Of a stretch of DNA of 64,000 nucleotides, positions 17,000 through 46,926 are shown piece after piece (position 1 is the first letter of the stretch; each line of letters begins with the position of its first letter). The notes under the pieces are model-generated. The model was not told where the DNA came from. It made no database searches and was given only the letters and a program-made list of their open reading frames with translations. Source of the stretch: Paragordius varius (Eukaryota > Animalia > Nematomorpha); NCBI GenBank assembly GCA_964247055.1, contig OZ176051.1, forward strand, positions 5,270,001 through 5,334,000, in the 5' to 3' direction. The translations under genes and the position numbers were made by a program.

Positions 17000-19900
17000 T
17001 ATATATGGGTTGATAGAATTTAATATATACCTATATCACAATATGATTTTTTTAATTTCATTAGCTGGCCCTGTGAGGCTTCGTTGTGACGTAGTCTCAT
17101 CAATTATTATTAATAATTTGCAATAAATAGAGGTAATGGAGATAAATAAATTATAAAAAACATATTAAATAAAAAATATCTTTATTTTTTAGGGGTTTTT
17201 GCATAGGCTTAAATATTGTTTAATCTATATTGACCATATTTAAACTGTCCCTTATCAAAGTTAATATTCAACTATCATTGGATTTAATTTAAGATTTTCG
17301 TTTTACGAAATTATGGTTAAAAATTTTATTTTAAAATTTTACACAGCTGGGATCAAGGGATATAAAAAGTAACTCATATTTGGTCCATTTTTTAAGGAAA
17401 GAATGATAATTCACCAAAAAGGTGTTTAACTGAACTCGTATGTCTTCTTAAGTTTTTTAATCAGCTCTAAAACCACGCCATTTTTGTATGGCGTCTCAGT
17501 TTAAAACCGGTAGACCTACGCATAGACCTGTATGGAAAAGCGAGTTAAATTATTTGCCTTTATAGAGCAAATATTTGGAATTATCTTTGATACCATCGTA
17601 TCATGGGTTATTCAAAATACCCCAACACTAAATAACACTAGACAACAAATTTTAACTTTTTACTGCCATTCTTGTAAATTTAAAATTTATTTCATTAAAG
17701 TACATGATTAGTAGATCTGAAAAGAAAATTGGTCTAGCATGGAAGAATTTTTTTATATTAGAGTTTATCGATAATTTTTGGCCCCGATTTAACATTAAAC
17801 TCGAAATTTCGAAAATTAAAAGTTTTAGATATGAAACCATGTATTTTATATCATTCGAAAGAGCGTAAAAAACTGCATCTTTTAACTGGTAATAAGTCAT
17901 TTAAATCAATCAGATGTAAAAGTTATTTGGATTTAAATGGTCGAAATTTTAAATCCTTAAAGAAGTCAAGAATTTTCACAGATAAACTAATTTGAAAATC
18001 ATATAAATTATTTTAATATAATTATTAGGGTTATATTAGTATTTAATTTAAAAAAAATGTTTGAAAAGCTTTTGGTTTGCTTTTTTAATAAAAATTATTA
18101 TAATCATAAATATTTTACCCAGTGGATACTAAAATGCATAGTTATAACTGTAAAATTATTACATAGCTATAAAAGATCAAAAATACCTTAAATTTTGTTT
18201 TTATTTTCAAAATTTCGAAATTATCACCCTCGTAAAGAAAATAAATTAATATTGATGAGATTGTAATTTATAAAAAATAAAAAACTTAAAAATGGCCGTT
18301 TTTAGTGACATAAAAGCAATTAAAAATGTTTTAATCAAAAAAACTTTCTTGTGTTATCTTTTTTGGACATTCATCACCATCTAAACAAAGTTTGAGCTAT
18401 TTTCATCCATTAGTTTTAAAAATATAATAATTAAAAAAAATGCTCTCGCTTCGCGCGTTTGTCGCTCTTTGTGTCCAATATTAACTGACGATGTCATACT
18501 TATTAGTATGCATTTTATAGAGTTTTTATTACTCTTTCGAATTATATATTACAAATGGGCATTACTTGTATATTTTCAAAGGTAAACATTTTTTAGTAAA
18601 ATTTTGATAAAGAGGGTGTTAATCAAAAAAAATCAAATTATACAAAATTCTTCCATAGAGTTAGAATTTTATTTCAGATTTACTTTTAAAATGATACTAA
18701 ATATCAGAAAATGCCAAAAACTCGAATGACAGAAAAATTTGTTGCCAGTGTAATCGTTATATGATGACGTATTTTTAGGGGCATAAAGGCCCCAAATTAA
18801 CGGCTGATTAAAAAAGCCTGACCTTTTGTATCTAGTTACGGGTATTATTTCAAGATTTTAATGGACTCATATGGCTTCGTAATGTTCTGTAAATTAGCTC
18901 CAAGTAATTTCTATAGGTGCAGTTTTTCGGGTAGCCCCTTATCCAGGGGCAGGTAAAAGCGTTTAGCATAATTTTGCCTTTATATGGGGAATATCTGGAT
19001 TTATCATGGATTCCGTATGTTCCTATAAGTCTCATAGGTTTTTTGAAATTTGGCTCAAAGGCAGGCTGTATCGATATGGTAACGCATCGCGGGTAGCTCC
19101 CTAACCAGGGGCGAAACAAAAAGACGCTTGATTAAAATTTTTGCCTTAATTCAGGAAATACCTGGAACCATGATTGATTCCATATGCTCTCGTGGGATTT
19201 CGAAAAAAGGATTCAAAAAAAGTTATTCTATGGTAGCGCATTTTTTAGGGCGTAAAGAGCCTTTTTAAACCACTAATTTAAAAAACCGCTCGACGGTAAT
19301 ACTTCAAGCCCTTATTGAACTCATATGGCCCAATTAGTTTTTTGAAAATTAAATCCTAAATAACGGAATTTCGATATGGGGCGCAGTTTTAGGCGGGTAG
19401 CTCCCTACCCAGAGACTGATACCAAAAAAAGGCTTGATTAAATTTTTTTCCTTTTTACGGAGAATACCTGGAATCATGATTTCATATGCTCTAATTATTT
19501 TTGGAAAAAATACCTCAAAACTAAAAAAATCATTATGGTGGCGCATTTTTCAGGGCGTAAAGGGCCTAATTAACAGCTAATTTAAAAAAACCCACATGAT
19601 CTGAATTTTCACCATGTTACGGGTAATATTTTAAGCCCCTATTGAACTCATATGGCCTGATATTCTGAATAGCTCCTAAGGCATGCTTTTTCGATATGCC
19701 GGGACAGTTTTTAGCGGGTAGCTCCTTACCCAGCAGCCAATATAAAAAAACACAACTAAAATTTTTGCCGTTTAACTGGAAAAACCTGCAATCCTCTATT
19801 GAATCTTTACGGTCTCATACTTTGGGCGAAAAATAGATTCAAAAAATTATCTTTGTGAACTTTGTTTTTTTGAAAAAATGGCATTTTACGGGGGGATCGG

Positions 19901-22007
19901 GTAAAAAGAGGGCTTAAATTAAAAAAGCGAGCCGACTATGTTCGGTGCAATCGAAAAGAACTAAACAAAAATCATATTTGAAATTGAATGGTCCATAAAC
20001 GTTCTCCGGAAAATTGTCTCGAAGACATGATTTCTGTGGAGTTCGTTTTCAAAAATTCCGTTTTTTAGACGAGATGGGCCCTAACTGGCGCTTAATTCAA
20101 GAAAGGGAGAAGCTATTGTCAAGCATTCAATAGTGTTTATATTCTTTCGACATTTGATGAATAGGTCTACCGGTTTTCCGGAAACAGATCACAAAGCCAG
20201 CATTTTCCTATTATAAATATATAGATTATACAGACAAATAAATATCTTAAGTTGTATCGCACTATATATTATAAAAAAACTTTTTTGGTCTGTATAATTG
20301 TTTAAGGGAATTACAAGTTAGTGTCTATATTTTTGCGAAAAAAAATGCATTTTACATCCTTTTTACGATATTATATATTGGTAAAAAACATAATTTTATT
20401 TGAAGCCTTAAACCGCTGATGCGCATTTTATGGACGCAAAAATCCAGCACTCCATGAAAACAATGTAGTCAATCAGAATCAACACCATAAAAAAGATTTT
20501 ACCGCCATGAATATAAAAATCCACAAAAAAATTCGTATCGAAGCGAATCAATAAATTCAGTAGAATTATATTGTTTTAAGCTGATGTTTATCTGACACAA
20601 CCATACAGTTTTTAATAATTATTAATGTCTTTGTGGGATCCTATTTAATTATGTAAAGAATATTAAAAAATATAAATTTTGTAGATGATTTAATAAATAT
20701 TATAAAAAGTTTGTTTAGAAAAAATAGAAAAAATTGTTTAGCAAGAAAATAACTGGATCGCCTCCATTGTAATACAAATTTTGATGCAAATTTTGCTGTC
20801 CTTAACATAAACATCTCTTCTCACTCCATACCATGTTTGGGCGCCATTGTTTGAGGGGCCCACAAAAGAATTGCTAACACCGCGACATGTGTCCTGACTT
20901 TCAATGACTAATTGATATGCCAAAAAATAAATATTTTTTTCTTCCCTTATAGTCAAATAATTTGGCGTTAAAGGCCTTAACTGACAGATAACATGGTTTA
21001 ATTGCAGCCCGGTAGTTTATATTAATGTTAAACCCCATATCTGCTGGATTAATGTATATAAACTTTGATTTTTATATCACTCCTTGGAAATGAGTTATGA
21101 TTAATGTTGTGGATTGATCTCTATGTGTATGACACGAGCTTTATTTACCTTTGCAAACAGCAAGACACAACTCCGACGGGATTACCTGTCAATCATGTAA
21201 GACAAAGACGTCCCGGGAAGTAAGGTCGGAATCGCTGATGCAGGGCTGGTTACCAATCTTTGGCATCTCCTTCCGAAGTTGTGAGTTGGTTCAAGAAGAA
21301 TCGTCGGTTATTTAACGCGCGTTAGAATCCTAGTCGGAAGTATAGCTGAAAAAATGTCGCACGAAAGAGTACCATCAACACTGATGTCCAATATCTCCAA
21401 AATTGGTCTACCTAAAAGGCCACACTCATTTAGAAGCAAATGATGTCCCCTTTTACACCAAAGATAAAATCCTGAAATAAAGTCTATGACTCAACATAGA
21501 CCTTTGTTACTTTGAGGAGTATGGACCTAATTCGTTCGTACGGTTATTTAATATCAAATATTGCTTTTACACACCTAACGCGGTTAAATTAACATTTCCT
21601 TTATTATATATATATATATATAGCTTATAAACCATACTAACTTACATTAACACACCTATAAAGGCATTTATTTATGTATATAGATACTAACTTCAAACCC
21701 AAGTTCCGATGGTTCCCGCTGTGAAGCTCCATGCGTTACGGGTGGGGTGACAGCAGGTGGACGACGATCTTTCGACGCTAGCTTTACTTGTTTGTGCAAA
21801 AAATTCATCGGGAATCTTTTCATCGCATTTTTTTCAATGAATTTTTAACAACTAATACTACAAGGTAATTAATGAATAATGTGGTTAGAAACATCAAATT
21901 ACATGGAGCTTTTTTATAATTATTAATCTAAAAATGATCTGTTTGTAGTTCCATCATTTTTAGACCTATTACACTGCGTACAAAATTAGGGCGGTGGTTA
22001 TAATAGC
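17000..22007 (+). mobile_element. Composite repeat with Helentron/DINE-like core (copy 1); paralog of 39670-43170
   Basis: Colinear with the 39.7-43.2 kb copy. It has a 5' (ac)tagctggccctgtgaggcttcg hairpin-type start, internal degenerate tandem units (~160/310 bp), and a ttt..(ta)n-tag end at ~21623. No Rep/helicase ORF was seen, so the family call is tentative. Confidence 0.6.
17636..18750. mobile_element. Non-autonomous CACT-terminal (CMC/CACTA-like) DNA transposon with 3-bp TAA TSD
   Basis: TIRs cactagacaacaaattt / aaatttgttgccagtg flanked by taa on both sides. The paralogous copy shows the empty site ctaaataatcg at ~40285. Confidence 0.85.
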
Positions 22008-22875
22008 CTGATGAAATAGGCAACCGTGTCCATAAAAAATAACCAGATGAAATATATATTTGATAGGAAAATATATCATGATTATCATGGTGCCTTTGGT
22101 TCTCGCACTTACATGATTTAATATTTACAGGTTTAATATAAGTGCTTCATATAAGAAAAATGGAAAATTTTGCGAACATTTTTTTAAATATAATTTTTTT
22201 TAAAAGCGAAATGCTTCATTCCAAAAAATATCACTAAAATATATAAATATATATTAGCTACATGTAAAAAGCAAAACAATATATTTAAATTTTGGTTTTA
22301 AGATGTGGGTTCAAAAGTCGCAATTTTTTTCGCTCTTATAAAATGGTCAGTTTTCTTTAAATAAAAACAAAAATGCCAATATTGCCCTATAATAAGGTTA
22401 AATATAAGCTAAATTATGATATCAATCAAAAATATTTTCAAAAAGGTATATTTCTAAAATATATTTTTTAGCAAAATTTTGTTGAAACCTCATACTATTT
22501 TGAAGGATGATGCAAAACGGTATAAAACCGCTTAAAGACATTATAAAAACAGTTTTGTCTTCATTATATTAAATGTAAATTGCGACGAATATTATGAGCA
22601 AATTAATTAAATTAGATTAAATTTTAAAGCGATAGAAATGCTTAGCATCATCGAGTAATATAATTTTGACCAACAAAAAAAATGGAAATTTTGCTTAAAA
22701 GTTAAATTTATAGCAAACTATTTAAATTTATTTAAAATTAAAGTTAAATAATCAAATTTAGTTTAGATGTTCTTTTAACTAACTTTGATTTTGATTGTTA
22801 ACTTATTGTTTAGCCTTATTATTATTATACAACAATCATAAACAATATTCTAAAAATTTACAAATCATTATAAAT

Positions 22876-24264
22876 ATGTTTATTGATTCTCACACATTGT
22901 GTAAGAACAAAAACGATTTAATTTCAAATCCGCTCAATGCAAAATACTACTTTTCACCAATTCATGATTTCATAAAGGAATTGCAGTTGAAGAATTCTAC
23001 AAATATCTTTCCAAATCAAAGAATAAAAGAAGTTAAACTCTGGGCTGATAGTCATTTGCATCCATCGAAGATAAACCCAGTGATTGGTAAAACATTAAGA
23101 CTGAGTGATTTTACAAATATCATTTCAAATCAAATTATAAAAGAGGTATACAAGGCTGATTTGCATCCATTGGACTTAAATCCAGTGATCAGTAAAACAC
23201 TAAGGCTGAGGGAATTGGCAAACCTCATTATAAATCAAATTATAAAAGATGTCAACAAAGCTGAAAGTCATTTGCATCCATCGAAGATAAACCCAGTGAT
23301 TGCTAAAACATTAAGGCTGAGTGATCATTTAAATATCATTACAAATCAAATAATAAAAGAGGTATTCAAGGCTGATAGCTATTCTACATCGGAGATAAAC
23401 CCAGTGATTGCAAAAATAATAAGGTTGACAGATTTTACAAATATCATTGCAAATCAAATAATAAAAGAGGTCAACAAGACTGATAGTTTTTGGCATCCAT
23501 CGGACATAAACACAGTGATCGCTAAAACATTAAGGCTGAGGGATTTTACAAACATCATTGCAGAACAAATAATAAAAGAGGTCAAACTCAAAGCTCATTG
23601 TTATTTGCATCCGTCAGATCTAAATCCAATAATTTCTAAAACATTAAGGCTGAGTGATTTTACAAATATGATTGCAAGTCAAATAATAAAAGAGGCCAAC
23701 AAGGGTGATGGTAATCACTCATCGGATCTAAACCTAGTGATGGCTCAAACATTAAGGCTGAGGGATTTTACAAATATCATTGCAAATGAAATAATAAAAG
23801 AAGTCAACAAGGCTGATAGTCCTTTACATCCTACCGAGACAAACCCAGTGATTGTTAAAATATTAAGGCTGAGGGAATTTACAAATATCATTGCAAAACA
23901 AATAATAAAAGAGGTCAACAAGGCTGGTAGCCAATTGCCTCCATCGGACATAAAAGTGATTGCCAAACCATTAAAATTAAAAGTTTATACAAATACTAAA
24001 GCAAATCATATGTTAAAAGACGCTATAATTATGGATCATCCCCATAATCAAACACAAAAAAGTTTTCATAAAAGTTTGAATATATCTAAACCGGAGAATA
24101 CTTCCGATTATAAAAGTAATGAAAGCCTAATTCTCTCCAATACTGCATCAATATTAAGAAAGAAAGTAAGATGGATAGATGATATAACACCAAATGAGGA
24201 AATGGTGGCAGCTAGAGAATACAAGCTGATAACCACTTGTCAAAATGGCAGATTTAAGAGATAG
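22876..24264 (+). CDS. Orphan tandem-repeat protein (462 aa from first ATG): 8 full plus 2 partial 35-38-aa repeats and a C-terminal SILRKKVRW motif
   Basis: Long open frame in 25% GC DNA. Repeat consensus TLRLxDFTNIIANQIIKEVNKADSxLHPSDINPVIAK; all length differences between units are whole codons. The ORF track starts at an upstream TTG (22795). Confidence 0.7.
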   Translation: MFIDSHTLCKNKNDLISNPLNAKYYFSPIHDFIKELQLKNSTNIFPNQRIKEVKLWADSHLHPSKINPVIGKTLRLSDFTNIISNQIIKEVYKADLHPLDLNPVISKTLRLRELANLIINQIIKDVNKAESHLHPSKINPVIAKTLRLSDHLNIITNQIIKEVFKADSYSTSEINPVIAKIIRLTDFTNIIANQIIKEVNKTDSFWHPSDINTVIAKTLRLRDFTNIIAEQIIKEVKLKAHCYLHPSDLNPIISKTLRLSDFTNMIASQIIKEANKGDGNHSSDLNLVMAQTLRLRDFTNIIANEIIKEVNKADSPLHPTETNPVIVKILRLREFTNIIAKQIIKEVNKAGSQLPPSDIKVIAKPLKLKVYTNTKANHMLKDAIIMDHPHNQTQKSFHKSLNISKPENTSDYKSNESLILSNTASILRKKVRWIDDITPNEEMVAAREYKLITTCQNGRFKR

Positions 24265-30600: not shown

Positions 30601-31889
30601 AAGGGTTTAAAAATGAGATATTAGCATTATTTTTTAAACAGTCACAAAAAAATAATCTAATAATTGGCATTAAAATAGAGGTGCCCGGGCCGCGGTAAGT
30701 TTCAATGATCTAATAATAAACGATTTACTTCTAGAAGGCAGAAAGCAAGTTTTTATTTATTTTGAGATCGTAGAATAAATAAAAATACATTTTTAGATAA
30801 AAAGGATCAAATATAAGATTATTGGGTAGAATTATTCTGGAAGATCAAGATTATTTTTGATGACCTGTTGACAAAACCATCTTGGTGTATATGATTCTGT
30901 TTCATGATATTAATACTATTTTATAGTAAACCTAAATGTAAAATTTACTTCAGAAAGTACGTGGATTGTTTTCAATTTAAGAAAGTCTCTTTACAAAATT
31001 TATTAGACTAATTTTATAGTTGCTTCTCAAGTTTAATAACTGTCCAATATCTTACATAAGGATATACAAGTATATGTCTTTATAAGCCTATAAATTAGAA
31101 AAACATACTTTTAAAGATTTTTTCTCTCTGTTATGGCGATGCTAAACATAAATAACACTGTGCAACAAAATATGGGGTCAATTTTCTGGTCTCGATTTTC
31201 TAAATATTTTCTGATTCCTTATAGTATTGTGATCAGATTTGCGTGAAAAATTTTTTTACTTACCCAGCTCGTTTTCGAGATATGGGACTTTTTCCATATT
31301 TGGACATATCCAAAATTTTCTTGTTTGTAAATATTTTTCGCTATGTAAACAAATAATATGTGGCTTACATAAGTATTTTTACAAGAAATTACCAATTTAT
31401 CTTCAAAATAAAAAAAAATTAACTCAAAATATCCAATACTTTTTGTTTTAGGGGGCAAAAACCCTCAAAAATTGGGTAACTTAACATTTTTTCACACAAA
31501 TATTTTTTATCAATTTATTAAATCAAAACAAACTTTATTATATGTTCTTGGATGTTAATAATGTTTGTTTAAGTATAAAAATCACTTTGTAATAGCTTTG
31601 TGGACTTTAATTTTTAAAAATAAATTTAATTTTTACAGCTTTTTTGCTGTTTTTTTATGTAAAAAATGATTTAATTTACTCAGCTGTAAATACTAATTTC
31701 ATTTTTTCATCTGAAATTTTTAAATATTTACCATATATGATGTGTTCAACAATACTATTATGCCTTAAAATATAATCCTAACCAAGTAATTGTTTATTTT
31801 AAAATTTAGGATGACTGACGGGTTGTTATGTTTAAATTGACCTTATATTAGTTAGCTTATGAAAATATAATATCCTTCTCTCTTACCTT

Positions 31890-33487: not shown

Positions 33488-34559
33488 TTAGATAAAAGCA
33501 TTCACAACCAAGATACTATACATTTTTAGCGTAACAAGGACAAAGGTGTATTATGCACTAAGGTAAGAGAGAAGGATAATATTATATTTACATAAGCTAA
33601 CTAAAATAAGGTAAATTATTAAACATAACAACCCGACTATCATCCTACTTGGTTAGGATTATATTTTAAGGCATAAAATTTAGTATTCTTGAACACAGAA
33701 TCCAGGTATCCAGAAAAGGGTGTGACAGGCTTGCTCCTTACCGTCACTGTATATGATAAATATTTAAAAATTTCAGATGAAAAAATGAAATTAGTACTTA
33801 CAGCTGAGTAAAATAAATCATTTTTTACATAAAAAAACAGCAAAAAAGCTGTAAAAATTAAATTTATTTTTAAAAATTAAAGTCCAAAAGCTATTACAAA
33901 GTGATATTTATACTTAAACAAACATTATTAACATCCAAGAACATATAATAAAGTTTGTTTTGATTTAATAAATTGATAAAAAATATTTGTGTGTAAAAAT
34001 GTTTAGTTACGCAATTTTTGAGGGTTTTTGCCCCCTAAAACAAAAAGTATTGAATATTTTGAGTAAATTTTTTTTTTATTTTGAAGATAAATTGGTAATT
34101 TCTTGTAAAAATACTTATGTAAGCCACATAATATTTGTTTACATAGCGAAAAATATTTACAAACAAGAAAATTTTGGATATGTCCAAATATGGAAAAAGT
34201 CCCATATCTCGAAAACGAGCTGGGTAAGTAAAGAAATTTTTTACGCAAATCTGATCACAATACTATAAGGAATCAGAAAATATTTAGAAAATCGAGTCCA
34301 GAAAAAGTTGTGTCACAGAGTAATAGATATTTGTAAATCGATTGTCTGAAGCATGTAGAGACTTGAATTAAAATGGAAATTTCCTGTTGTATTTAATTAA
34401 TTAGGCATTAATAAATATAAAATAAGCGATAGAACCTAAAAACAATAGGTATTTAGTAAATTATTTGCTTTACAAAAGCCTGGGGTATCCAAATACCCCA
34501 ATTTGAATCGGAGGACTAAAATGAATGTGTTGAATCCAAGTGTTAATTGTATACTCATC

Positions 34560-34880: not shown

Positions 34881-36489
34881 GTAAAATACAAAATATTTTC
34901 AAGGCAAATTTTTTTTCGAAAATATTGTTTTACTTGTTTATGTAGTTTATGTTATATTGGATATATTTTACAATGAAGCTTCTACTCTCACCAAAAATAT
35001 TATTAAAACTGTGCGTTTTTCTCATTTTCTGATATTAAGCACTTACCACAAAAGTGTAAATAAGGTTCTTAAATCACTGGTAAGAGCGCAAAACCAAAAG
35101 AACCATGATAACTTTAATACATTTTCCTACCAGAATATATATCTATATATATATTTGATCAAATTTTTCTTGTAGTATTTCATCACATATTTATTATACC
35201 CCCGATTTTAGTATGTATAGAGAAGTTACCATAAAAGTTAAATATCTTTTTTAAATCACTAGTAAGTTAAGGCCAAAAGATAGGAATCGTGATGCATTCT
35301 TAATTTGCTATATGGGAATTTCTATTACTATTGATTATATGCAGTGTGTTTTATGCGGTATATTCAAAATTATTAGAATTTATTTTATATTTGTAAACTT
35401 GGCTCATGACCCGTAATGGCCAAAGCCAAAAGCACCCTATTACATATTTCTACCCGAAAATATATCAAAATTATTTTTTTTCGCGCCAAAATTTATTTTT
35501 AATGTCTGAAATCCGTAAAAATAAACAAAATGCGATTTTTTGCACAGAAAACACACCATTGCATTTTTAAATAAAGCTAAAACCTGTCTATCCCGAATAA
35601 ATATATTTTTAAACTCTTTTGTTTATAAAATTATATGACAAAATATGGTATTTACGTTTATATTATTGTCGCAAAATCTATAATTCCTTTTACAGTTTAA
35701 TATTGTTATTCATGCATGTAATCCACATGATGGTTGTTTCAAATGGGCGGTAAATTAAAAAACCTGGCCATGTACAATGTATAAATACAAAACTTGAAAA
35801 GATTATAGATGATGCAGCTTATCAATTAAATCTAAATTTATCCCACTGTCATTTACTATTCTATCCTAAAGTTGATGAATCTCAATATGACCTATCGGAT
35901 ACAATTAGCATAGGTATGGTTTATTTAGTTTATATCTTTTATGATTGTTTATTAGAGCTTCTATTTTACCGTGTATATACAATTTAATACAAGCTACTTA
36001 TAGTTTTTTAAAGTTTTATTTTTATTAGATTTTTTTTAACTTTGTTTATGCATTGTTCAGTTATTCAATAGAGAATGAACTTTTTTCTAAGTTGTATTTT
36101 GGCATTAAGAATACTTTCTACCCTTGCATAAATAAATTTTAGTATAACAAAATATGGTTCTATAATAACAGTTGTTTAAAATCCGTAAGATAACGATAAA
36201 AGAAAATTATATAGAATTAAATGAAAGTATAATTAGAAATTATAAACGATATGTGAAACCCTTCGTTAATAGCAATCTCAGACTAGTTTCGTGCTTGTTA
36301 GCACTCATATTTATACTTTCATTTAATTCCAAATTTTTCTTTATCGTTATCTTACAGATTTTAACAACTGTTTTTACAAAACATAACCAATCCGTTATTT
36401 ACCATTAAAATATGGTTCTGTTTTTAAAAAAGCGTAAAGAAAAATTCTTACTCATCTTATAACTTTTGCACCAAACTACAATATACGGT

Positions 36490-37401
36490 GACATGAGAAC
36501 GGCTACATATAGATATTGCTGGCCCAATCGACGGTTATTACTGGTTGGTAACTATCGATAGCGCTACTCGCTGGGTGGAGGTGGATATGCTCAAAGTGAT
36601 TTCGACTCAGACCATTCTAAATTGCCTAGAAAAGCATATTGCCCGATTTGGATTTCCTCGACAAATCGTAACTGACAATGCCAGCTATTTCGCATCAAAA
36701 GAATTCGAATTGGTGTTACAAAAATTCAAGATTAAACACATCCGAGCCACACCCTATCACCCAAAGACCAACGGGTTGGTAGAAAAAGTGATAAAAACCT
36801 TGAAAAAAACAAATACTACTGCACTAAAGGCGAGTCAATGCATGCCTATGAAGCCATGAACGGTGTTTTATATTCCTACAGAACAAGCTTCCACGCGTCG
36901 ATAAAAAAACCCCTCCGCTTTGTTCCTAAAACGTCAAGTACACAGCCCTATCTCCTGGGTAAATCGACCCCATCTGAATTTATAGAGCATAAATCAGAAC
37001 CACGCCGCGAATTTCAGCCCAATCAACCTATCTACATAAAGAATGAGTTGAATAAGGGGTGGAGGCAGGGGCATATCATAAAAAGAAGGGGGTTCCTATC
37101 TGCGCCAACGATTAGAACATCTTGATAGAGACACTGATCCAGCATCGGGGGAAGATAACATTCCCTCTATTCTTGTCGGCCAGCCTTTACAGCGGTCTCA
37201 AACCACAGAATCTACCGTGGACACCACCTTCACAGAAACCTCGGAAACCAGAACGCAATCTCGCCTATCACCGGAGGAAAGTACCCTTAATCAGAGGGTT
37301 GTAAGAGAAAACCCAAACCCGGAAAGAAGATACCCGTTGCGCAAGTGTCAACCCCCCGATAGGCTAATCTTAGAAGGAAAGTAATGTAAGGGATTTTATT
37401 G
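36490..37401 (+). mobile_element. Ty3/gypsy LTR retrotransposon 3' end: integrase core and C-terminus, PPT and first 17 nt of the 3' LTR
   Basis: ERLHIDIAGP...VTDNASYF...PYHPKTNGLVEK (complete D-D-E, rve) followed by frameshifts; then RRYPLRKCQPPDRLILEGK*, PPT agaaggaaag, and LTR start TGTAAGGG at 37385. Confidence 0.92.
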
Positions 37402-37437
<36 letters not shown>

Positions 37438-37440
37438 ATA
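37402..37440. repeat. Interrupted (TA)n tract at the LTR/EVE junction
   Basis: (TA)n-TTT-(TA)n; the same interruption is present at 43575-43621. Confidence 0.9.
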
Positions 37441-38941
37441 TTTTGGATAGACATATTGTGTTACTGTCTTTTATTATTATCTGCAATAGAGGACAAGTGA
37501 CAACATGTCTCTTACATGAGTTTCCATCTTGGGCGGTATCCTTATCATAATTCAGTAACTGTCTTTTCATATCTTCGATTCAATTCATTTGAAAACCTCT
37601 CTCCCTTTGAAGCTGGAGATTCCCTTGGCTAGATCTCTCAAACATAGATTGTAAATTTAATTAAGTAATTTTTTCAATCTTTGTCAGGCAAATAAAAACT
37701 CTTCCTCTGTTAACAAATAAGCAAAATTTTTATAGAGTTTATCCCAGTAGTTGGGAAAACATCTACTAGTTTCTCACAAATTACATGATCCATTGATGAT
37801 GTAATAAATCGTCTCATTGAGCTTGTATTATAAGCGTCCCAAGTATTGTTTACCTCAGATATAATCTAGGAAAATTACTGATTTGGACGTCATGTTCCTG
37901 GGACTTTATCATCCCTATATATGGTTTTCATTCTATTTTTTTACTTGCTTCATACAATTTACTCAATTCTACCTTCCAAACATGCCCTGCTGATCTTAAA
38001 AATTCATCTCCTAGCCCTAATATTGAACAGGTAAAAGTTACGCTCTGTATGTGGTAATGCTTTTAAACAAACAATTGTTGAGTGACCAACACTTTAGCCG
38101 AATCCCAATAATAAAAAATCCTCCACAATGGAAATGAAGAATACTCACTCCCAGGCATTATGTCTTCCTCCCGTATAATCCTAGAATATGTACCTGCTCT
38201 ATTTCTCAAAAATACCCATCCTACAATTTCAGCTATTATTGAATTTCCAATTAAGCCTCCCTCTCCCAAAGCTTTCATTCCATTTTTAGCTGGGAGTTGT
38301 GCGCCACTCAGTGTAACAGCACTTGAAAACCTCTTTGCTATTTGTCTGTATGCTGTTTCTTTAACTGTGTATGCAGGTGCTAGTGTGCATATGGCAGTTG
38401 CCACCAAAAAATCTCTCAATGAATCTTGATTGGATCCAGTATATTTGTTTCTTCTTGTAATGCAGCTTCTTTCAATCTCTATAGGTGTATAGTATTGGTT
38501 CACTTGTGCCCAAATGTGAGGATATATCAAAAGCAAAACTGTCAATGCTTTCTTGTGATTAATAGACCACTAATAGAACAATTTCATAATTAGTTAAAAT
38601 ATAATGTTCTGTTGACACATTGGTTACTCTTGTTGATGCTGATTCAGTTCCCCCTGTGAGAAAAACTCCATTAATGCCTCTGTTAAGATGTCCAAACACC
38701 TTGCCAATACAAATTGTTGAGTGGAAATTGAGAATTCCACTCCCAACTTAAATATTACTTTGTTCATTCTGTAATGAAACACTCTGTTAAAAATTTGACA
38801 TTCTTATTAATGATTCCAGGAATATTTCATTATAAAGATAAACAAATTTGTAGCGATAGCACACTCCTTAACCCTGCTGGAAAATTGAAAAAAACTTTCG
38901 ATTGTTTGCTAATACTTATTGTAGACCCAAATGCTATCATA
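37441..38941 (-). pseudogene. Endogenous viral element copy A: decayed Mononegavirales-like nucleoprotein gene, putative ATG at 38801
   Basis: Joining frames gives ~470 aa: MSNF*QSV...DSLRDFLVATAICTLAPAY...FPLWRIFYY...SILGLGDEFLRSAGHVWK..LSKLYEA..KPYIGMIKSQE.D.QISNFPRL...LALQMASS. The PY..I..L..FP.L..G spacing matches the conserved central N motif of paramyxo-, filo- and pneumoviruses (recognised by eye). No introns; G-rich coding strand. Confidence 0.7.
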
Positions 38942-39654
38942 TCAATTTCCACTCAACAATTTGTATTGGCAAGGTGTTTGGACATCTTAACAGAGTCATT
39001 AATGGAGTTTTTCTCAACAGGGGGAACTGAATCAGCATCAACAAGAGTAACCAATGTGTCAACTGAACATTATATTTTAACTAATTATGAAATTGTTCTA
39101 TTAGTGGTCTATTACTCACAAGAAAGCATTGTTTGTAAAGCATTGACAGTTTTGCTCTTGATATCCTCACATTTGCGCACAAGTGAACCAATATTGTACA
39201 CCTATAGAGATTGAAATAAGATGCATTACAAGAAGAAACAAATATACTGGATCCAATCAAGATTCATTGAGAGATTTTTTGGTGGCAACTGCCATATGCA
39301 CACTAGCACCTGCATACACAGTTAAAGAAACAGCATACCAATAGCAAAGAGGTGTTCAAGTGCTGTTACACTGAGTGGCGCGTAACTCCCAGCTGAATCA
39401 GCTTTTGAAAATGGAATGAAAGCTTTGGGAGACGAAGGCTTAATTGAAAATTTAACAATAGTTGAAATTGTAGGATGGGTATTTTTGAGAAAGAGAGAAT
39501 GTTCATATTCTAGGACTATACGGGAGGAAGACATAATGCCTGGGAGTGAGTATTCTTCATTTCCATTGTGGAGGATTTTTTTTACTGGGCTAAAGCGTTG
39601 GTCACTCAACAATTGTTGATTTACAAACATTACCACACACAGAGTGTAACTTTT
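38942..39654 (+). pseudogene. Endogenous viral element copy B: inverted duplicate of 38033-38731
   Basis: Reverse-complement match from tcaatttccactc to gtaacttttg; peptides in ORFs 39416-39619(+) and 38063-38545(-) are near identical. Confidence 0.85.
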
Positions 39655-39669
39655 GATATATATATATAT

Positions 39670-42600
39670 ATATATATGGGTTGATAGAATTTAACATATA
39701 CCTATATCACAATATTATTTTTATAATTTCACTAGCTGGCCCTGTCAGGCTTCGCTGTGACGGAGTTTCATCAATTACTATTAATAATTTGCAAAAAATA
39801 GAGGAATAGAATAAATAAATATAAAAAACATTAAATAATGTCATTAATTATTCTTTTACGGGTTTTTGCATAGGCTCATTACTCTAAATTGACCATATTT
39901 AAACTGTTTCTTATGAAAGTTAATATTCAACTATCATTGGATTTATTTTAAGATTTTCATTTTACGAAATTATGGTTAAAAGTTTTATTTTAAAATTGTT
40001 AAGGGATATAAAAAGTAACTCATTTTTGGTTTCTTTTTTAAAGGAAAGAATGATATACAAATACGCCAGAAATGTGTTTAACTGAACTCGTATGTCTTCT
40101 TAAGTTTTTGTAATCAGTTCCAAAACCAATTTTTGTATGGCTTCTCAGTTTTTAAACCGGTAGACCCCTACCCATAGACCTATATGGAAAAGCGTTGAGT
40201 TAAATTATTGCCTTTACAGGGCAAATATGTATAATCATCTTTGATACCATCGTCTCATGGGTTATTTAAAAAATACCTCAACACTAAATAATCGTTATAT
40301 GATGGCGTATTTTTAGGGGCATAAAGGCCCCAAATTAACGGCTGATTAAAAACGCCTCACCTTTTGTTTCTAGTTAGGGGTAATATTTCAAGCTTTTAAG
40401 GAACTCATATGGCTTCATAATGTTCTCTATTAGCTCCAAAACAACGCAGTTTCTATATAGGGGGGCGCAGTTTTTTGGATAACCCCTTACCCAGGGTCAG
40501 GTATAAAAAAGCGTTGAGCATAATTTTGCCTTTATGTGGGGAATATCTAGATTTATCATGGATTCCATATGTTCCTATAAGTCTCAGGTTTTCTGAAATT
40601 TAGCTCAAAGGCAGGCTGTATCGATATTGTGACGCAGTTTTTAACCCTCTAAGCAGGGACGAAACAAAAAACGCTCGTTGCCTTAATTCGGGAAATACCT
40701 GGAATCATGATTGATTCCATATGCTCTAATTAGTTTTTGCAAAAATTGCCTCAAAACTAAAAAATCATTATGGTGGCGCATTTTTCAGGGCGTAAAGGGC
40801 TTAATTAACAGCTAATTTAAAAAACCACACGATCTGAATTTTTGCCATGTTACGGGTAATATTTTAAGCCCCTATTCAACTCATATGGCCTGATTATATG
40901 GAATTTAGCCCAAAGGCACGCTTTTTCGATATGACGGGGCAGTTTTTCGCGGGTAGGTCCTTACCCTACAGCCAATATAAAAAACGCACAACTAAAATTT
41001 TTGGCTTTTAACAGGGAAAACCTGGAACCCTCATTGAATCTCTAAGGTCTCATACTTTGGCCGAAAAATAGATTCAAAAAATTATTTTTGTAAACTTTCT
41101 TTTTTTAAAAATGGCATTTTAAAAGAGGGCCTAAATTAAAAAAAGCGAGGCGACTATGTTCGGTGCAATTGAAAAAAAGTAAAAGAAAATCATATTTAAA
41201 ATTGAATAGTTTAACACGTTTTCCGGAAAATTGTTTGTGGACTTCGTTTTCAAGAAAACCCGTTTTTTACACGAGGTGGGCCCTAACTGGCGCTTAATAT
41301 CAAAGAAAGAAGCTATTGTCGGGGCATTTAGTGTTTGACATTTGGATTTGAATAGGTGTACCGGTTTTCCAGAAACAGATCACAAAGCCAGCATTTTCAA
41401 TTTTTATAAAGATATAGATTATACAGACAAATAAAAAACTTTAGTTGTATAGCACTAGATATTATAGAAATAGTCTGTTTAAATTGATTAAGGGCATTAC
41501 AAGTTAGTGTCTTTTTTTCGAAAAAAAATGCATTTTACATCCTTTTTACGATATTATATATAAAAAAACATAATTTTATTTGAAAGCCTTAAACCGCTGA
41601 TGCGCATTTTATAGACGCAAAAATCCAGCACTCCATAAGAACAATGTAATTCAATCAGAATCAACACCATAAAAAAGATTTTTTGCCATGGATATTAAAA
41701 TCCACTAAAAATTTCCTATCGAAGCGAATCAATAAATTCAGTATAATTATAATATTGTTTTAAGCTGATGTTTATCTGACACAACCATACACTTTTTAAC
41801 AATTATTAATGTGTTTGTGGGATCCTATTTAATGTAAAGCATATTAAAAAATATAAATTTTGTAGATGATTTACTAGATTTTATAAAAAGTATATATTTG
41901 TTTAGCAAGAATATTGGATCGCCTCCATTGTAATACAAATTTTGATGCAAATTCGATTGCTGTCCTCAATAAAAACATCTCTTCTCATTGCGTACCATGT
42001 TTGGCCGCCATTGTTTGAGGAACCAACAAAAGAGCCTTTGCTAACACCGCGACATGTGTCCTGACTTTTAATGACTAATTAAAATGCCAAAAAAATAAAT
42101 ATTTTTTTCCTCCCTTATAGTCAAATAATTTAGCGTTAAAGGCCTTAACTAACAGATAAAATGGTTTAATTGCTGCCCTAGTTTATTTAAATGTAAAACC
42201 CCATATCTGCTGGATTAAAGTATGTAAACTTTAATTTTTATATCACTCTTTGGAAATGGGTTATGATTAATTTTGAGGATTGATCTCTATGTGTGTGACA
42301 CGAGCTTTATTTACCGTTGCAAACAGCAAGACCCGACTCTGACATGATTACCTGTCAATCATGTAAGACAATGACGTCCCGGGAAGCAACGGAATCGCTG
42401 ATTGAGCAGGGCTGGTTACCAATCTTTGGCATCTCCTTCTGAAGTTGAGAGTTGGTTCAAAGGAAGAATCATCGGTTATTTAACGCGGGTTAGAATCCTA
42501 GTCGGAGGTATGAAACATGGTCGCACAAAGGAGGAACGTCAACACTGATGTCCAATATCTCCAAAATTGGTCTACCTTAAAGGCCACACTCATTTAGAAG

Positions 42601-43170
42601 CAAATGATGTCCCCTTTTGAACCAAAGATGAAATCCTAAAATAAAGTCTATGATACATAGACCTTTGTTACTTTGAGGAGTATGGACCTAATTCTGTTTG
42701 TACGGTTATTTAATATCAAACATTGCTTTTACACACCCAACACGGTAAAATTAACATTTTATTTAATATATATATATATATATATATGTATATAGCTTAT
42801 AAACCATACTAACTTACATTAAACCTATAAAGGCATTTATTTATGTATATAGATAATAACATCAAACCCAAGTTCCGATGTGTCCCGCTGTAAAGCTCCA
42901 TGTGTTACGGGTGGGTAGGGACCTTGACGGCAGGTGGACGACGATCTTTCGACGCTAGCTTTACTTGTTTTTGTAAAAAAATCACCGGGAACCTTTTTAT
43001 CACATTTTTTTGTATGAATTTTTAACAAAATTAATGAATAATGTTGTTAGAAACACCAAATTACATGGAGCTTTTTGATAATTATTGATCCAAAAATGAT
43101 CTGTTTGTAGTTCTATCATATTTATAAGCTCCTATTACACTGCATAAAAAATTGGGGCGGGGGTTATAAT
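39670..43170 (+). mobile_element. Composite Helentron/DINE-like repeat (copy 2)
   Basis: Colinear with 17000-22007 but lacks the 1115-bp CACT insertion and one ~305-bp internal tandem unit. Confidence 0.6.
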
Positions 43171-43195
43171 TAGGGTTGTGCTGATGCAGGTCAGT

Positions 43196-43574
43196 CAGGG
43201 GCATATCATAAAAAGAAAGGGGTTCCTATCTTATGAAGTCCAAGACGAGGAGGGAATTAGCCGAAAACACGCGGATCAGCTACGCCAACGCATCTTGATA
43301 GAGACACTGATACAGCATCGGGGGAAGATAACATTCCCTCTATTCTTGTCGGCCAGCCTTTACAGCGGTCTCAAACCACAGAATCTACCGTGGACACCAC
43401 CTTCACAGAAACCTCGGAAACCAGAACGCAATCTCGCCTATCACCGGAGGAAAGTACCCTTAATCAGAGGGTTGTAGTAGAAGACCCAAACCCGGAAAGA
43501 AGATACCCGTTGCGCAAGTGTCAACCCCCCGATAGGCTAATATTAGAAGGAAAGTAATGTAAGGGATTTTATTG
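43196..43574 (+). mobile_element. Second Ty3/gypsy 3' fragment (SH3-like integrase tail, PPT, LTR start at 43558)
   Basis: GHIIKRKGFLSYEVQDEEGISRKHADQLRQR. Near identical to 37067-37401 but retains ~50 bp deleted there. Preceded at 43171 by a ~25-bp hAT TIR remnant (tagggttgtgctga). Confidence 0.9.
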
Positions 43575-43612
<38 letters not shown>

Positions 43613-43621
43613 ATATATATA

Positions 43622-44599
43622 TTTTGGATAGACATATTGTGATACTGTCTTTCATTATTATCTGCAATAGAGGAAGCCATTTGCAATGCAAGTGACAACA
43701 TGTCTCTTACATGAGTTTCCATCTTGGGCAGTATCCTTATCATATATTCAGAAACTGTCTTTTCATATCTTTGATTCAATTCATTTGTAAACCACTTTCC
43801 CTTTGAAGCTGGAGACGCTCCCTTGGCTAGATCTTTCAAACATAGATTGTAAATTCTATTAAGTAATTTTTCCTTGTTAACATCTTTGTCAGGCAAACTT
43901 AATAAGAACTCTTCCTCTGTTAAAAAATAGGCAAAATTTTTATAGAGTTTATCCCAGTAGTTGGGAAAACATCTACTAGTTTCTCACAAGTTACTTGATC
44001 CATTGATGATGTAATAAATCGTCTCATTGAACTTGTATTTTAAGCATCCCAAGTATTGTTCTTAGAGGACGACCATTTTTTGAAATAGTGTATACCTAGC
44101 AGACATAATCTAGGAAAATTACTGATTTGCAGGTCTTGTTCCTGGGACTTTATCATCCCTATATATGGTTTTTCTTCTATTGCTTCATACAATTTACTCA
44201 ATTCTTCTTTTCAAACATGCCCTGCTGATCTTAAAAAGTCATCTCCTAACCCTAATATTGAACAGGCAAAAGTTACACTCTGTATGTAATGTTTGTAACC
44301 AACAATAGTTGAGTGACCAACGCTTTAGACCATTCATAATAATAAAAAATCCTCCACAATGGAAATGAAGAATACTCACTCCCAGCATTATGTCTTTCTC
44401 CCGTATAGTTCCTAGAATATAAACCTTCTCTATTTCTCAAAAATACCCATCCTATAATTTCAGCTATTGTTGAATTTTCTATTAAGCCTCCCTCTCCCAA
44501 AGCTTTTATTCCATTTTCAAAAGCTGATTCAGCTGGGAGTTGTGCGCCACTCGGTGTAATAGCACTTGAACACCTCTTTGCTATAGTTTCACTTTAACA
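43622..44599 (-). pseudogene. Endogenous viral element copy C: C-terminal two-thirds of the N-like gene, 5' part cut by a hAT insertion
   Basis: Best-preserved motif region: EELSKLYEAIEEKPYIGMIKSQEQDLQISNFPRLCLLGIHYFKK. ORF 43543-43896 gives the helical C-terminus. Same junction with the LTR as copy A. Confidence 0.75.
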
Positions 44600-44600
44600 T

Positions 44601-46926
44601 CAGTGGTACTCAAACCGCGGGCCGCATGCGGCCCTAAGAGTGCTTTAAAATTGCCCTATTACCATATTGATAATCTTATTTTTTTATTGGTGAATTTTTA
44701 AATACACATAATCGAATTTTTGATTATTTTAAAATTAATTTATTTTAAATTTAATTTTTAATAATTTTTCTTTTTTACCCAATTTTAAATGTTTCCCTAC
44801 ATTAAATTGGTTCAAAATTTTGGCACACGTTGTTTCTGTTTCTATTTTCTTATCTATTTTGAAATTTTTATTGCATTCCTTTTTTGTATTCAAAAGCCTT
44901 TCACCCAAACTTGCATATACATATTCTTTTCATTATCCTGCATCATTTTTTATAACTCATTGCCATAAAATATTTTTCAAATCAACATCATTGAATTTCT
45001 ACCTGTTTTTTCCATAATATAAATTATATTCCTATTTTTTGATAAATTTACATAATATTTAAACATAAATTCAAAGGATGACATCTAATGCTAAAAAAAT
45101 AAATTATCCGATTCGCTTCTTTAAAAAAGAATGGAAAGAAAAAGTTTGTCGTTTTAAATAAAAATGTTGCTACCTGCCTTCTTATATGTAAGTACAACAT
45201 AATTATAAAAAAAATAAAATATGACATTTTACAATTCATCATTCTAATAAATTACCGAAAAATGATGATGTAAGAAAGGAAAAATATTAAAAGATTAAGG
45301 AATTATACCAGAAAGAAAAATCTATTATGTCCATAGCTTTCTCCCAGGAAAAAGCTGTAACATTAGCTTCGTATGAAATTATATTTTAGGAAAAAATATG
45401 AAACCGTTTACTCATTCCCAACTATAAAAGAATGTCTAATAAATGGTTGCACTTTTTTATTTGATAAATTCCATAATAATTCAACTCGACGCATTAAAGA
45501 TATGTCTAAATATATTTTAACAAAACATTATTGGCTCTAAAAAACTAATATTTAAGTTGCTATTGATTCTAGCACTGTTAGTTCAACACCCCAATGTGCG
45601 CTCTTCGTGAAATTTTCCAACGACAACATAATAAAAATAAACGAGGATATATATTTTTACCAATGAAATACCACGAAAGGAAGTTATTTTCTCGAAATAA
45701 TTAGCCCTTTTTTCGATAATAATGGTATATCTATGAAATAATTGGTTTCACAGATGGCTGTCTCTCTATGATTGAAATAAACAAAGGATTTATTACTCTT
45801 TTGAAAAAATATAAATTGCAAAATATTTTATCCTTTCACTGCTTTATTCATCAAAACTTGGTTTCGCGTATAAAGATAAATTTAGTAATTAAAACGGTTG
45901 TGAATATAGTTAACCACATCCGTGGCAGAGAATTCAACCGCCGTAAATTTAAAAACCTTCTGAAATATACAGAGTGAGTTTAATGATATTCTTTTGTACA
46001 CCGCTGTAAGATGGCTAAGCATTAGTTATTAAATAGATTTTTTGTTTTAAGACATGAAATCTATTATTTATAAAAGATAACAGAAACTTTGAAGAGGAAA
46101 TTAATAGTTACAAATAATGGGTATTAGCCTAACTTTGCGACATTATTTATAAACTTAGTATTTTTATTACAGGACTTCAAGTGAGCAAAAATAACCTAAT
46201 TAGCTAATCAAATATTTGTTTTGAAGAAAAATTAATTATATGTAAACAAGATTTTATAAAACACTCCTTTCCCACACTTAAAACAATTCATGAAGAAATT
46301 TACCGCGGAGATCAATTTAATAATAGACAATCATTTAATATATTAGTCTGATTCTTAAAACTCGTTGAAAATCCATGGCATATGGATATATCCAATATTA
46401 AGCAACTTGAGCATTTCGGGCAGGCGCATATATTAAAGAATTCGTAGATTTTAAAAATGATTCAGTTTGGAGGCTATATTCGAGGAGAACCGTAGAGAAA
46501 AAGATGTGTAGAGTTTTGGCAAGTATAAAAGAGCTCAAGTTATCCTAACTGTTTTTTCCTCAACTTACACGTGTGAGACGGCATAATCAAAAATTATGTC
46601 AATACATACAGAAATCGTCTAACCGATGATCATTGGACGACGTATTAAGATTGGCCTGTCATGAGGCTAAACCAAATTTGTTAAAAAATTGGTTATATCA
46701 AAATAAATGTTGTTATCAAAATATTTTAATTTTTTAAAATAAAAGGTGCAAAACATTTTGGCTGGATTTACATGCGATCCGCAAAAAATTTATTGTGCTG
46801 ATTTAGATTATAGTTATATGCATATGTGTCAAATAACTATGTAAAAATTGCCATTATAGGTTCATGGCCCTCGAAAAAAATCTATATTTTATTTGGCCCG
46901 TCAAATACTTTTGGCGAGTGTCACTG
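44601..46926 (+). mobile_element. hAT Buster/SPIN-like (GTF2IRD2-like transposase) decayed element, both ends present
   Basis: Ends cagtggtactc / gagtgtcactg. ORF 45768-45977 reads SFHCFIHQ..VIKTVVNIVNHIRGREFNRRKF, followed by VRWLS and FSSTYTCE remnants. No matching TSD. Confidence 0.88.

What the first reader, a model, noticed from the sequence alone, without database searches (positions are those of the whole stretch)
38033..39654. Fold-back of the viral gene: a ~700-bp-stem hairpin template, candidate heritable antiviral siRNA source
Seen: arms 38033-38731 and 38942-39654 are reverse complements, roughly 90% identical by eye, around a 210-nt loop. The turn uses the short inverted motif gagtggaaattga/tcaatttccactc, as expected for a template switch. 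A transcript in either direction folds into long dsRNA made entirely of viral N sequence, and the gypsy 3' end sits 650 bp upstream. Known: long hairpin RNAs are Dicer substrates for endogenous siRNAs, and EVE-derived piRNAs can restrict the cognate virus in Aedes. Inference: retrotransposon capture, then inverted duplication, then cassette duplication gives an RNA-only viral memory. I know of EVE silencing mainly through single-stranded piRNA precursors, so a hairpin EVE would be a distinct route. Function is not shown by sequence alone.
Basis: partly seen in the sequence, partly recalled or inferred. Interest (0 to 1): 0.86.

Follow-up and report, generated by a model that had tools for sequence, protein, structure and literature searches.

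The report
Inverted duplicate of an orphan ORF
A real 0.7-kb inverted repeat that could fold into a long RNA hairpin sits beside a decayed retrotransposon, but it matches no known virus protein and shows no sign of being kept by selection, so it looks like an ordinary rearrangement in repeat-rich DNA.

Summary
Arms 38033-38731 and 38942-39654 are reverse complements, 94.9% identical at aligned bases and 89.7% with gaps counted, around a 210-nt spacer. Either transcript is predicted to fold into a duplex of about 660 arm-arm pairs. A third, direct, partial copy (44267-44584) shares arm A's outer flank, and an integrase-bearing retroelement remnant ends 649 bp upstream.

The interpretation does not hold where it matters. 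The arms carry a decayed reading frame: open stretches of 168 and 160 codons, among the seven longest of 9101 in the window. That frame matches nothing. An exhaustive HMMER search of 1.84 billion proteins, Pfam, PHROGs, PDB sequences and Foldseek on weak models returned no nucleoprotein and no viral protein.

Differences between the copies look neutral: 3 synonymous against 25 non-synonymous codon changes. In the part shared with the third copy, the arms are no more alike than either arm is to that unpaired copy. The window holds at least six other inverted pairs.

Best reading: a neutral head-to-head partial duplication of an unidentified pseudogene, made by a template switch at a short palindrome. 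It could yield siRNAs if transcribed, but nothing in the sequence shows this. Interest is low to moderate.

The parts
38033..38731 (-). Arm A. Inverted copy of the 3' about 700 nt of an unidentified reading frame (sense on the - strand), cut short at its 5' side by the fold-back junction and broken. Its outer flank continues into shared segment X.
   Evidence: Longest open stretch 168 codons. No homologue.
38732..38941 (+). Spacer ('loop'), 210 nt, unique in the window. It is open for all 70 codons and in frame with arm B, so it is probably more of the same frame rather than foreign DNA.
   Evidence: no similarity to arm B's start or to anything else in the window.
38942..39654 (+). Arm B. Copy of the same frame, sense on the + strand, broken. 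Its outer end abuts a (TA)n run and repeat Y.
   Evidence: No homologue for its open stretch.
38716..38747 (.). A 32-nt near-palindrome at the arm A / spacer junction. The first 16 nt of the spacer mirror arm A's inner end. The same roughly 15-nt motif recurs as a direct repeat at arm B's inner end (38943-38957).
   Evidence: read; reasoning in the full report.
36497..37384 (+). Remnant of an LTR-type retroelement pol gene: integrase catalytic core (about 36530-36765) plus a C-terminal tail. It is 5'-truncated and lies in three overlapping open stretches in alternating frames, so at least two frameshifts. No RT, RNase H, protease or LTR pair was found.
37063..38032 (+). Segment X, the outer flank shared by arm A and copy C. 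It holds the end of the pol frame, a purine-rich tract, a (TA)n run at 37394-37449, then about 580 bp of AT-rich DNA.
43193..44266 (+). Segment X', a direct duplicate of X. It holds a 146-codon open stretch on the - strand, downstream of and on the same strand as the arm frame. No Pfam, PDB or PHROGs match.
44267..44584 (-). Copy C, a direct partial copy of the outer roughly 320 bp of arm A. Homology stops abruptly at 44584.
39655..43170 (+). (TA)n run followed by non-coding repeat Y, a second copy of 16997-22004 at about 85%. Y separates arm B from X'.

Best explanation
This is a genuine, moderately old, head-to-head partial duplication of an unidentified and already decaying reading frame. 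It lies just downstream of a degenerate integrase-bearing retroelement in a repeat-dense stretch of an AT-rich, animal-like genome. Inferred origin: a replication or repair template switch at a short palindromic motif copied the frame back on itself, and the same flank-plus-frame segment was also duplicated in direct orientation 6 kb away. Since then the copies have drifted neutrally. If the locus is transcribed through both arms, for example by read-through from neighbouring repeats, the RNA would fold into about 0.7 kb of imperfect dsRNA and could feed an endogenous siRNA pathway, as inverted transposon copies do elsewhere. That step is inferred. Nothing in the sequence shows the locus is used, and nothing shows the frame is viral.
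For: Shown. The inverted repeat is real and diverged: 35 substitutions and 6 indel events, which rules out a zero-spacer read chimera. Predicted fold is -1131 and -1148 kcal/mol, with 661 and 662 arm-arm pairs, z = -60 and -83 against shuffles. There are 9 perfect runs of 21 bp or more, the longest 115 bp. Coding ancestry: open stretches of 168 and 160 codons are among the 7 longest of 9101 in the window. GC by codon position is 0.40 / 0.44 / 0.30. Neutral decay: 3 synonymous against 25 non-synonymous codon differences between A and B, and 1 against 19 between A and C, where 22% synonymous is expected by chance. Transitions to transversions are 18:17, and G:U-compatible mismatches number 8 against 10 for the two transcript orientations. 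No excess pairing: in the 320 bp shared by all three copies, A-B is 91.7%, A-C 91.8% and B-C 93.2%, with 13, 11 and 9 private changes. Context: integrase remnant, duplicated flank X/X', repeat Y and at least six other inverted pairs in 64 kb. Junction: a 32-nt near-palindrome plus a roughly 15-nt direct repeat around the spacer.
Against: The loop-proximal 400 columns of the arms are 97.6% identical against 91.5% for the distal part (Fisher p = 0.0013). This could mean gene conversion, or selection for pairing in the inner stem. Two long open stretches survive, which is more than old junk usually keeps. The frame has no homologue, so a viral or other foreign source cannot be excluded. Host proteins from this window also found no relatives at the thresholds used, so the databases cover this lineage poorly. 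Expression is unknown.
Confidence: 0.6

Rival explanations
1. The arms are a fragment of an RNA-virus nucleoprotein gene captured by a retrotransposon, then inverted. The hairpin transcript is diced into antiviral siRNAs and acts as a heritable RNA-only memory.
For: The hairpin potential is real. The locus abuts a retroelement pol remnant. On the - strand the arm frame is followed by a second open stretch of 146 codons in X' and then by the pol end. That layout is compatible with capture of a two-gene RNA in antisense to pol, but it would fit any two-ORF unit. Arm GC is 0.36-0.44 against about 0.28 for the window, which fits foreign origin.
Against: No likeness to any nucleoprotein or viral protein. 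Exhaustive phmmer of the 160-residue piece against 1.84e9 proteins gave two hits, both artefacts of tandem-repeat proteins. Pfam and PHROGs gave nothing. PDB sequences, which include many solved viral nucleoproteins, gave nothing. The word-based search of the other piece gave nothing. Foldseek against BFVD and PDB gave nothing at E <= 0.001, although the models were weak (pLDDT 35 and 55). There is no selection signal on pairing in the shared part.
Confidence: 0.07
2. A working hairpin-RNA (hpRNA) locus of non-viral origin. The inverted duplicate of a host, selfish or transposon gene yields endo-siRNAs that silence the remaining copies in trans, as in Drosophila hpRNA-target pairs.
For: The architecture matches young hpRNAs: an inverted gene fragment, a short spacer, a nearby related copy and transposon debris in the transcript unit (PMC10317233). 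The inner stem is 97.6% identical with perfect runs up to 115 bp.
Against: No intact target copy in the window. The outer stem is no better paired than the unpaired paralogue. No orientation bias in G:U-tolerated changes. Expression is untested, and the host's small-RNA pathways are unknown because the host is unidentified.
Confidence: 0.15
3. The two arms are the long terminal inverted repeats of a fold-back or long-TIR DNA transposon.
For: The window holds a palindromic repeat family of about 1 kb (5512-6554, with partial copies near 22.0-22.5 kb and 34.9-35.1 kb) and other inverted pairs.
Against: Arm A's outer end is not an element end: homology with copy C runs on for about 970 bp into X. 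No target-site duplication flanks 38033 and 39654. The arms carry one continuous reading frame rather than subrepeats. No other copy of the unit exists in the window.
Confidence: 0.03
4. Assembly artefact: a chimeric fold-back read, or a misjoin of two paralogous copies.
For: Inverted joins are a known failure of long-read libraries (own knowledge). The junction sits on a short palindrome.
Against: The arms differ by 35 substitutions and 6 indel events and are separated by 210 nt of unique sequence in frame with one arm. Read chimeras give identical arms with no spacer.
Confidence: 0.04

Closest known systems
Drosophila hairpin-RNA (hpRNA) loci, e.g. Nmy/Tmy, hp-ODox and Dsim-hp58 (PMC10317233)
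   Same: An inverted duplicate of part of a gene with a short spacer, born close to related copies and mixed with transposon fragments. A single transcript would give a long imperfect duplex.
   Different: Those loci are defined by Dcr-2-dependent siRNAs, precursor transcripts and identified targets. Here none of the three is known, the source gene is unidentifiable and the host is unknown.
Inverted-repeat endogenous pararetrovirus loci in Solanaceae that give hairpin siRNAs (PMC9868043)
   Different: There the viral identity is demonstrable by homology and the siRNAs were measured. Here viral identity failed every test, and the host looks like an animal.
EVE-derived piRNAs in Aedes, with EVEs embedded among LTR-retroelement fragments (Suzuki et al. 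2020, PMC7522710, and Tassetto et al. 2019, PMC6797480, as cited)
   Same: The locus sits next to a retroelement remnant in a repeat-dense stretch.
   Different: Those EVEs are recognised by similarity to viral proteins and act through single-stranded piRNA precursors. Here there is no viral similarity and the geometry is a hairpin.
Palindromic repeats and inverted transposon copies that give dsRNA in C. elegans (PMC7084138)
   Same: Expressed inverted repeats form hairpins that become Dicer substrates unless ADARs edit them. This is the generic fate expected for a locus like this one if it is transcribed.
   Different: Those are mostly non-coding transposon repeats inside genes. Here the repeat is a duplicated reading frame of unknown origin.
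Fold-back inversions by microhomology-mediated template switching (own knowledge of replication-based rearrangement models; not tested against a paper here)
   Same: Head-to-head duplication with a short palindrome or microhomology at the turn and an asymmetric spacer.
   Different: The mechanism is inferred from the junction sequence only. The intermediate states are not observable.

Membership tests
Non-retroviral endogenous viral element (nucleoprotein-derived) | Significant sequence or fold similarity of the encoded frame to a viral protein | tested here: not met
   Exhaustive phmmer gave two spurious repeat hits only. Pfam, PHROGs and PDB sequences gave none. The word-based search gave none. 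Foldseek BFVD and PDB gave none at E <= 0.001, on weak models.
Non-retroviral endogenous viral element (nucleoprotein-derived) | Integrated in host DNA and flanked by host or transposon sequence | tested here: met
   Flanked by a pol remnant, repeat Y and host genes (a GPCR and a CTD-phosphatase-like gene) in the same window.
Non-retroviral endogenous viral element (nucleoprotein-derived) | Phylogenetic nesting within a clade of exogenous viruses | not testable with these tools
No relatives were found.
hpRNA / endo-siRNA locus | Long inverted repeat able to form a duplex of hundreds of base pairs within one transcript | tested here: met
   661-662 arm-arm pairs, z = -60 and -83. 9 perfect runs of 21 bp or more.
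hpRNA / endo-siRNA locus | A single precursor transcript across both arms, and Dicer-dependent 20-23-nt small RNAs from the arms | not testable with these tools
   No expression data are reachable and the host is unidentified.
hpRNA / endo-siRNA locus | An expressed target gene homologous to the arms | tested here: inconclusive
   Only the truncated copy C is present in the window. The rest of the genome is not available.
Fold-back / long-TIR DNA transposon | Both outer arm ends are element termini flanked by a target-site duplication | tested here: not met
   Arm A's outer flank stays homologous to copy C's flank for about 970 bp. No duplication at 38033 and 39654.
Ty3/gypsy LTR retrotransposon (the upstream neighbour) | Retroviral-type integrase core | tested here: met
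   Pfam rve E = 2.4e-13. PDB integrase cores down to E = 1.8e-9.
Ty3/gypsy LTR retrotransposon (the upstream neighbour) | RT, RNase H and protease domains in gypsy order, plus an LTR pair | tested here: not met
   No such domain in open stretches of the 3.5 kb upstream. No direct repeat pair bracketing the remnant. The clade is therefore undetermined.
Read-chimera assembly artefact | Identical arms with no unique spacer | tested here: not met
   5.1% substitutions, 6 indel events and a 210-nt unique spacer.

The most novel reading that the evidence does not exclude
The arm frame and the open stretch that follows it on the same strand are the first two genes of an unknown virus or selfish element with no sequenced relative. 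They were captured antisense next to a retroelement. The later fold-back turned the capture into a hairpin whose siRNAs silence that element. This would be an animal counterpart of the plant pararetrovirus hairpin loci.
Probability: 0.07. Interest if true: 0.7.

Novelty: new member of a known kind. Interest (0 to 1): 0.25.

Why it matters
If the locus were shown to make siRNAs against a virus or a selfish gene, it would be an animal example of immunity or conflict control born from a simple inverted duplication, and a datable one because an unpaired sister copy lies 6 kb away. As it stands it mainly serves as a caution. A long, well-paired inverted repeat next to a retroelement is not evidence of viral origin or of function.

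Tried and rejected
1. Viral nucleoprotein identity was searched piece by piece, never across a stop or a frameshift. Pfam, PHROGs, PDB sequences, exhaustive phmmer, the word-based search, and AlphaFold2 single-sequence models (pLDDT 35 and 55) with Foldseek against BFVD and PDB gave no named relative. The proteins I had in mind were nucleoproteins of rhabdo-, chu-, bunya- and orthomyxo-like viruses. None came back.

2. The Pfam 'viral movement protein' hit to a 52-residue antisense piece at the spacer (E = 0.11, below the cut-off) is rejected as chance.

3. A tandem-duplication origin of the spacer is rejected: there is no similarity between the spacer and arm B's first 210 nt.

4. The long-TIR transposon and read-chimera explanations are rejected (see rivals).

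5. The host could not be identified. There were no exact-product records for four window ORFs, no relatives for the phosphatase exon or the GPCR at the thresholds I set (the 1e-10 cut-off for the GPCR was too strict and used my last search), and no Rfam or tRNA gene.

6. An LTR pair around the integrase remnant was not found.

Full report
1. THE OBSERVATION

The repeat finder returns six collinear inverted segments that tile 38033-38731 against 38942-39654 at 84-98% complementarity. As a single blastn alignment they give 89.9% over 726 columns, E = 0. A global alignment gives 651 matches, 35 substitutions (18 transitions, 17 transversions) and 6 indel events covering 40 columns. That is 94.9% at aligned bases and 89.7% with gaps counted. 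The spacer is 210 nt. The short inverted motif it names is just the inner 13 nt of each arm.

As RNA, the 1622-nt stretch is predicted to fold at -1131 kcal/mol on the + strand and -1148 on the - strand, with 661 and 662 arm-to-arm pairs. Shuffled sequences give about -350, so z is -60 and -83 (12 mononucleotide shuffles each). The stem holds 9 perfect runs of 21 bp or more, covering 434 nt, the longest 115 bp.

2. ANATOMY OF THE NEIGHBOURHOOD

The window is 24-37% GC, about 28% on average. It carries animal-type genes:
- A single-exon rhodopsin-family GPCR at 3-1043 on the - strand (Pfam 7tm_1).
- A CTD-small-phosphatase-like gene with introns.

Nothing suggests a human contig. I could not identify the host.

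Upstream of arm A lies a pol remnant of an LTR-type retroelement (36497-37384, + strand):
- It has an integrase core with Pfam rve E = 2.4e-13 and retroviral integrase cores as its best PDB matches.
- It is 5'-truncated. No RT, RNase H or protease was found in the 3.5 kb upstream.
- It lies in three overlapping open stretches in alternating frames, so it has at least two frameshifts.
- It has no LTR pair.
'Gypsy' is not established.

From 37063 the sequence (segment X), together with the outer roughly 310 bp of arm A, is duplicated in direct orientation at 43193-44584 (X' plus copy C). Identity is 86-98% depending on the bin. Arm B's outer end instead abuts a (TA)n run and repeat Y (39655-43170). 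Y has a second copy at 16997-22004, and its ends are the same in both copies. Y has no Pfam-detectable ORF.

3. WHAT THE ARMS ARE

The arms carry a reading frame whose sense is the - strand in arm A and copy C and the + strand in arm B. The two copies therefore lie head to head.

- The longest open stretches are 168 codons (arm A) and 160 codons (spacer plus arm B). They are among the 7 longest of 9101 stop-to-stop stretches in the window. Coding ancestry is hard to doubt.
- The frame's own stop lies about 30 nt inside the outer end of the arms.
- The spacer is exactly 70 codons, open and in frame with arm B. It is probably more of the same frame, which would make the ancestral product at least about 300 residues, cut at its 5' side by the junction.

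- Between arms A and B there are 6 indel events. Five are not multiples of three and one is.
- Read against the other arm's open stretch, arm B shows 4 frameshifting indels, 1 in-frame indel and 1 stop.
- Read the same way, arm A shows 3 frameshifting indels and 1 stop.
- Copy C is truncated to about 320 bp, with 2 frameshifting and 2 in-frame indels.
- These counts overlap and cannot be polarised without an outgroup.

4. IS IT VIRAL?

Every piece was searched separately, never across a stop or a frame change.
- Pfam gave nothing at E <= 1, apart from a sub-threshold chance hit of an antisense 52-residue piece.
- PHROGs gave nothing.
- PDB sequences gave nothing relevant at E <= 10.
- Exhaustive phmmer of the 160-residue arm A piece against 1.84 billion representatives gave two hits. 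Both are short motifs repeated in tandem-repeat proteins with no family assignment.
- The word-based search of the 146-residue piece gave nothing. That tool only sees proteins of 80-255 residues for a query of this length.
- AlphaFold2 without an alignment gave pLDDT 35 for the arm A piece and 55 for the other piece. For the latter, only one of five models reached that score, and it is a helical bundle.
- Foldseek of that model against BFVD and PDB gave no match at E <= 0.001 and no nucleoprotein. With such a model this is weak evidence.

No named relative came back, so the likeness to a viral nucleoprotein is not supported. It is not excluded either: the frame is an orphan, and host proteins of this window also found nothing at my thresholds.

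On the - strand the arm frame is followed by a second open stretch of 146 codons (in X') and then by the end of pol. That is the order a two-gene RNA captured antisense to pol would give. Any two-ORF unit would fit equally, and that second stretch also has no Pfam, PDB or PHROGs match.

5. SELECTION TESTS THAT SEQUENCE ALONE ALLOWS

a. Coding constraint since duplication. A against B gives 3 synonymous and 25 non-synonymous codon differences. A against C gives 1 and 19. Random changes would give 22% synonymous. There is no constraint: the copies decayed as pseudogenes.

b. In the 320 bp shared by all three copies, A-B is 91.7%, A-C 91.8% and B-C 93.2%, with 13, 11 and 9 private changes. The arms are no better matched than an arm and the unpaired copy.

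c. Mismatches that remain G:U pairs number 8 for the + transcript and 10 for the - transcript, out of 35. There is no orientation bias and no compensatory pattern.

d. One thing is unexplained. The loop-proximal 400 columns are 97.6% identical and the distal part is 91.5% (Fisher p = 0.0013). The step falls about where copy C's homology ends. Arm-to-arm gene conversion near the spacer, regional differences in mutation rate (the X/X' bin next to the arm end is only 86% identical), or selection on the inner stem could each explain it.

6. HOW IT AROSE (INFERENCE)

At the arm A / spacer junction, the first 16 nt of the spacer mirror arm A's inner end, giving a 32-nt near-palindrome at 38716-38747. 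The same roughly 15-nt motif recurs as a direct repeat at arm B's inner end. Two readings fit.
- The motif occurred twice in the frame and served as microhomology for a fold-back template switch, or for a centre-asymmetric deletion in a first, perfect palindrome. This reading explains why the spacer is open and in frame, which would happen by chance about 0.2% of the time.
- A 195-nt insertion with a 14-16-nt target duplication entered a spacer-less palindrome. The spacer has no other copy in the window.

Arm A and copy C share flank X, so the - strand orientation is ancestral and arm B with the spacer is the inverted copy. Overall divergence of the inversion (5.1%) and of the cassette duplication (about 6%) is similar.

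7. BASE RATE

The same 64 kb holds at least six other inverted pairs or palindromes:
- 31182-31889 against 33560-34305 (87%, 767 bp).
- 45653-46919 against 62634-63985 (77%).
- A palindromic repeat family of about 1 kb.
- Three smaller palindromes.

Long inverted repeats are common here. This one is the best preserved and has the shortest spacer.

8. COMPARISON WITH WHAT IS KNOWN

In architecture the locus resembles young Drosophila hpRNA loci, which are inverted gene fragments born near related copies and mixed with transposon debris (PMC10317233). Membership of that class needs a precursor transcript, Dicer-dependent siRNAs and a target, and none of these is testable here.

Hairpins made from integrated viral DNA are already described in plants (PMC9868043). 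Expressed palindromic repeats are known Dicer and ADAR substrates in C. elegans (PMC7084138).

9. VERDICT

The inverted repeat is real and the hairpin potential is real. The viral identity is unsupported and function is unknown. My probabilities are:
- Neutral rearrangement of an orphan pseudogene in repeat-rich DNA: 0.6.
- Working non-viral hpRNA: 0.15.
- Long-TIR transposon: 0.03.
- Assembly artefact: 0.04.

10. STEPS LEFT OUT, AND A POSSIBLE SLIP

I did not look up the arm frame or arm DNA in the viral or metagenome contig collections.

All alignments across frame changes printed counts only.

Possible slip, flagged and not deleted: the outputs of my scripts and notebook entries 1 and 2 carry coordinates of open stretches in and around the arms. 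I needed these as references for the search tools. The ends of such stretches lie next to stops, so they could be read as places of breaks.

Noticed in passing
window 31182-31889 and 33560-34305: A second long inverted pair (767 aligned bp, 87% identical, about 1.7-kb spacer). It could be a transposon with long terminal inverted repeats or two opposed copies of one repeat.
   Followed up: no
window 5512-6554, with partial copies at 22032-22549 and 34912-35142: A self-complementary (palindromic) repeat family of about 1 kb, 68-72% identical between copies, reminiscent of fold-back or MITE-like elements.
   Followed up: no
window 16997-22004 and 39668-43170: Non-coding repeat Y, two copies at about 85% with identical ends. 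The first copy has an extra 1.1 kb (17635-18751). It contains internal sub-repeats of about 300-480 bp. No Pfam domain in any open stretch.
   Followed up: partly
window 22795-24261 (+): A 489-codon open frame built of tandem repeats of about 111 bp (22986-24020, 74-79% identical). It has only sub-threshold Pfam hits.
   Followed up: no
window 37213-37513 against 43340-43650: Within the duplicated flank X/X', the GC-rich end of the pol frame and the (TA)n region are 97-98% identical, while neighbouring bins are 86-95%. Divergence along the duplication is patchy.
   Followed up: partly
window 43193-44266 (- strand): A 146-codon open stretch inside X', on the same strand as and downstream of the arm frame. 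It is disrupted in the other copy (X). No Pfam, PDB or PHROGs match, and it was not searched in the large protein databases.
   Followed up: partly
window 3-1043 (-), 9958-11706 and 12955-13320 (+): Host genes: a single-exon rhodopsin-family GPCR that runs off the window, and a CTD-small-phosphatase-like (NIF) gene whose long first exon has no detectable relatives outside the domain.
   Followed up: partly
window 45653-46919 and 62634-63985: A distant inverted pair (about 1.4 kb, 77% identical, 15.7 kb apart). Strongly negative GC skew at 44-46 kb.
   Followed up: no
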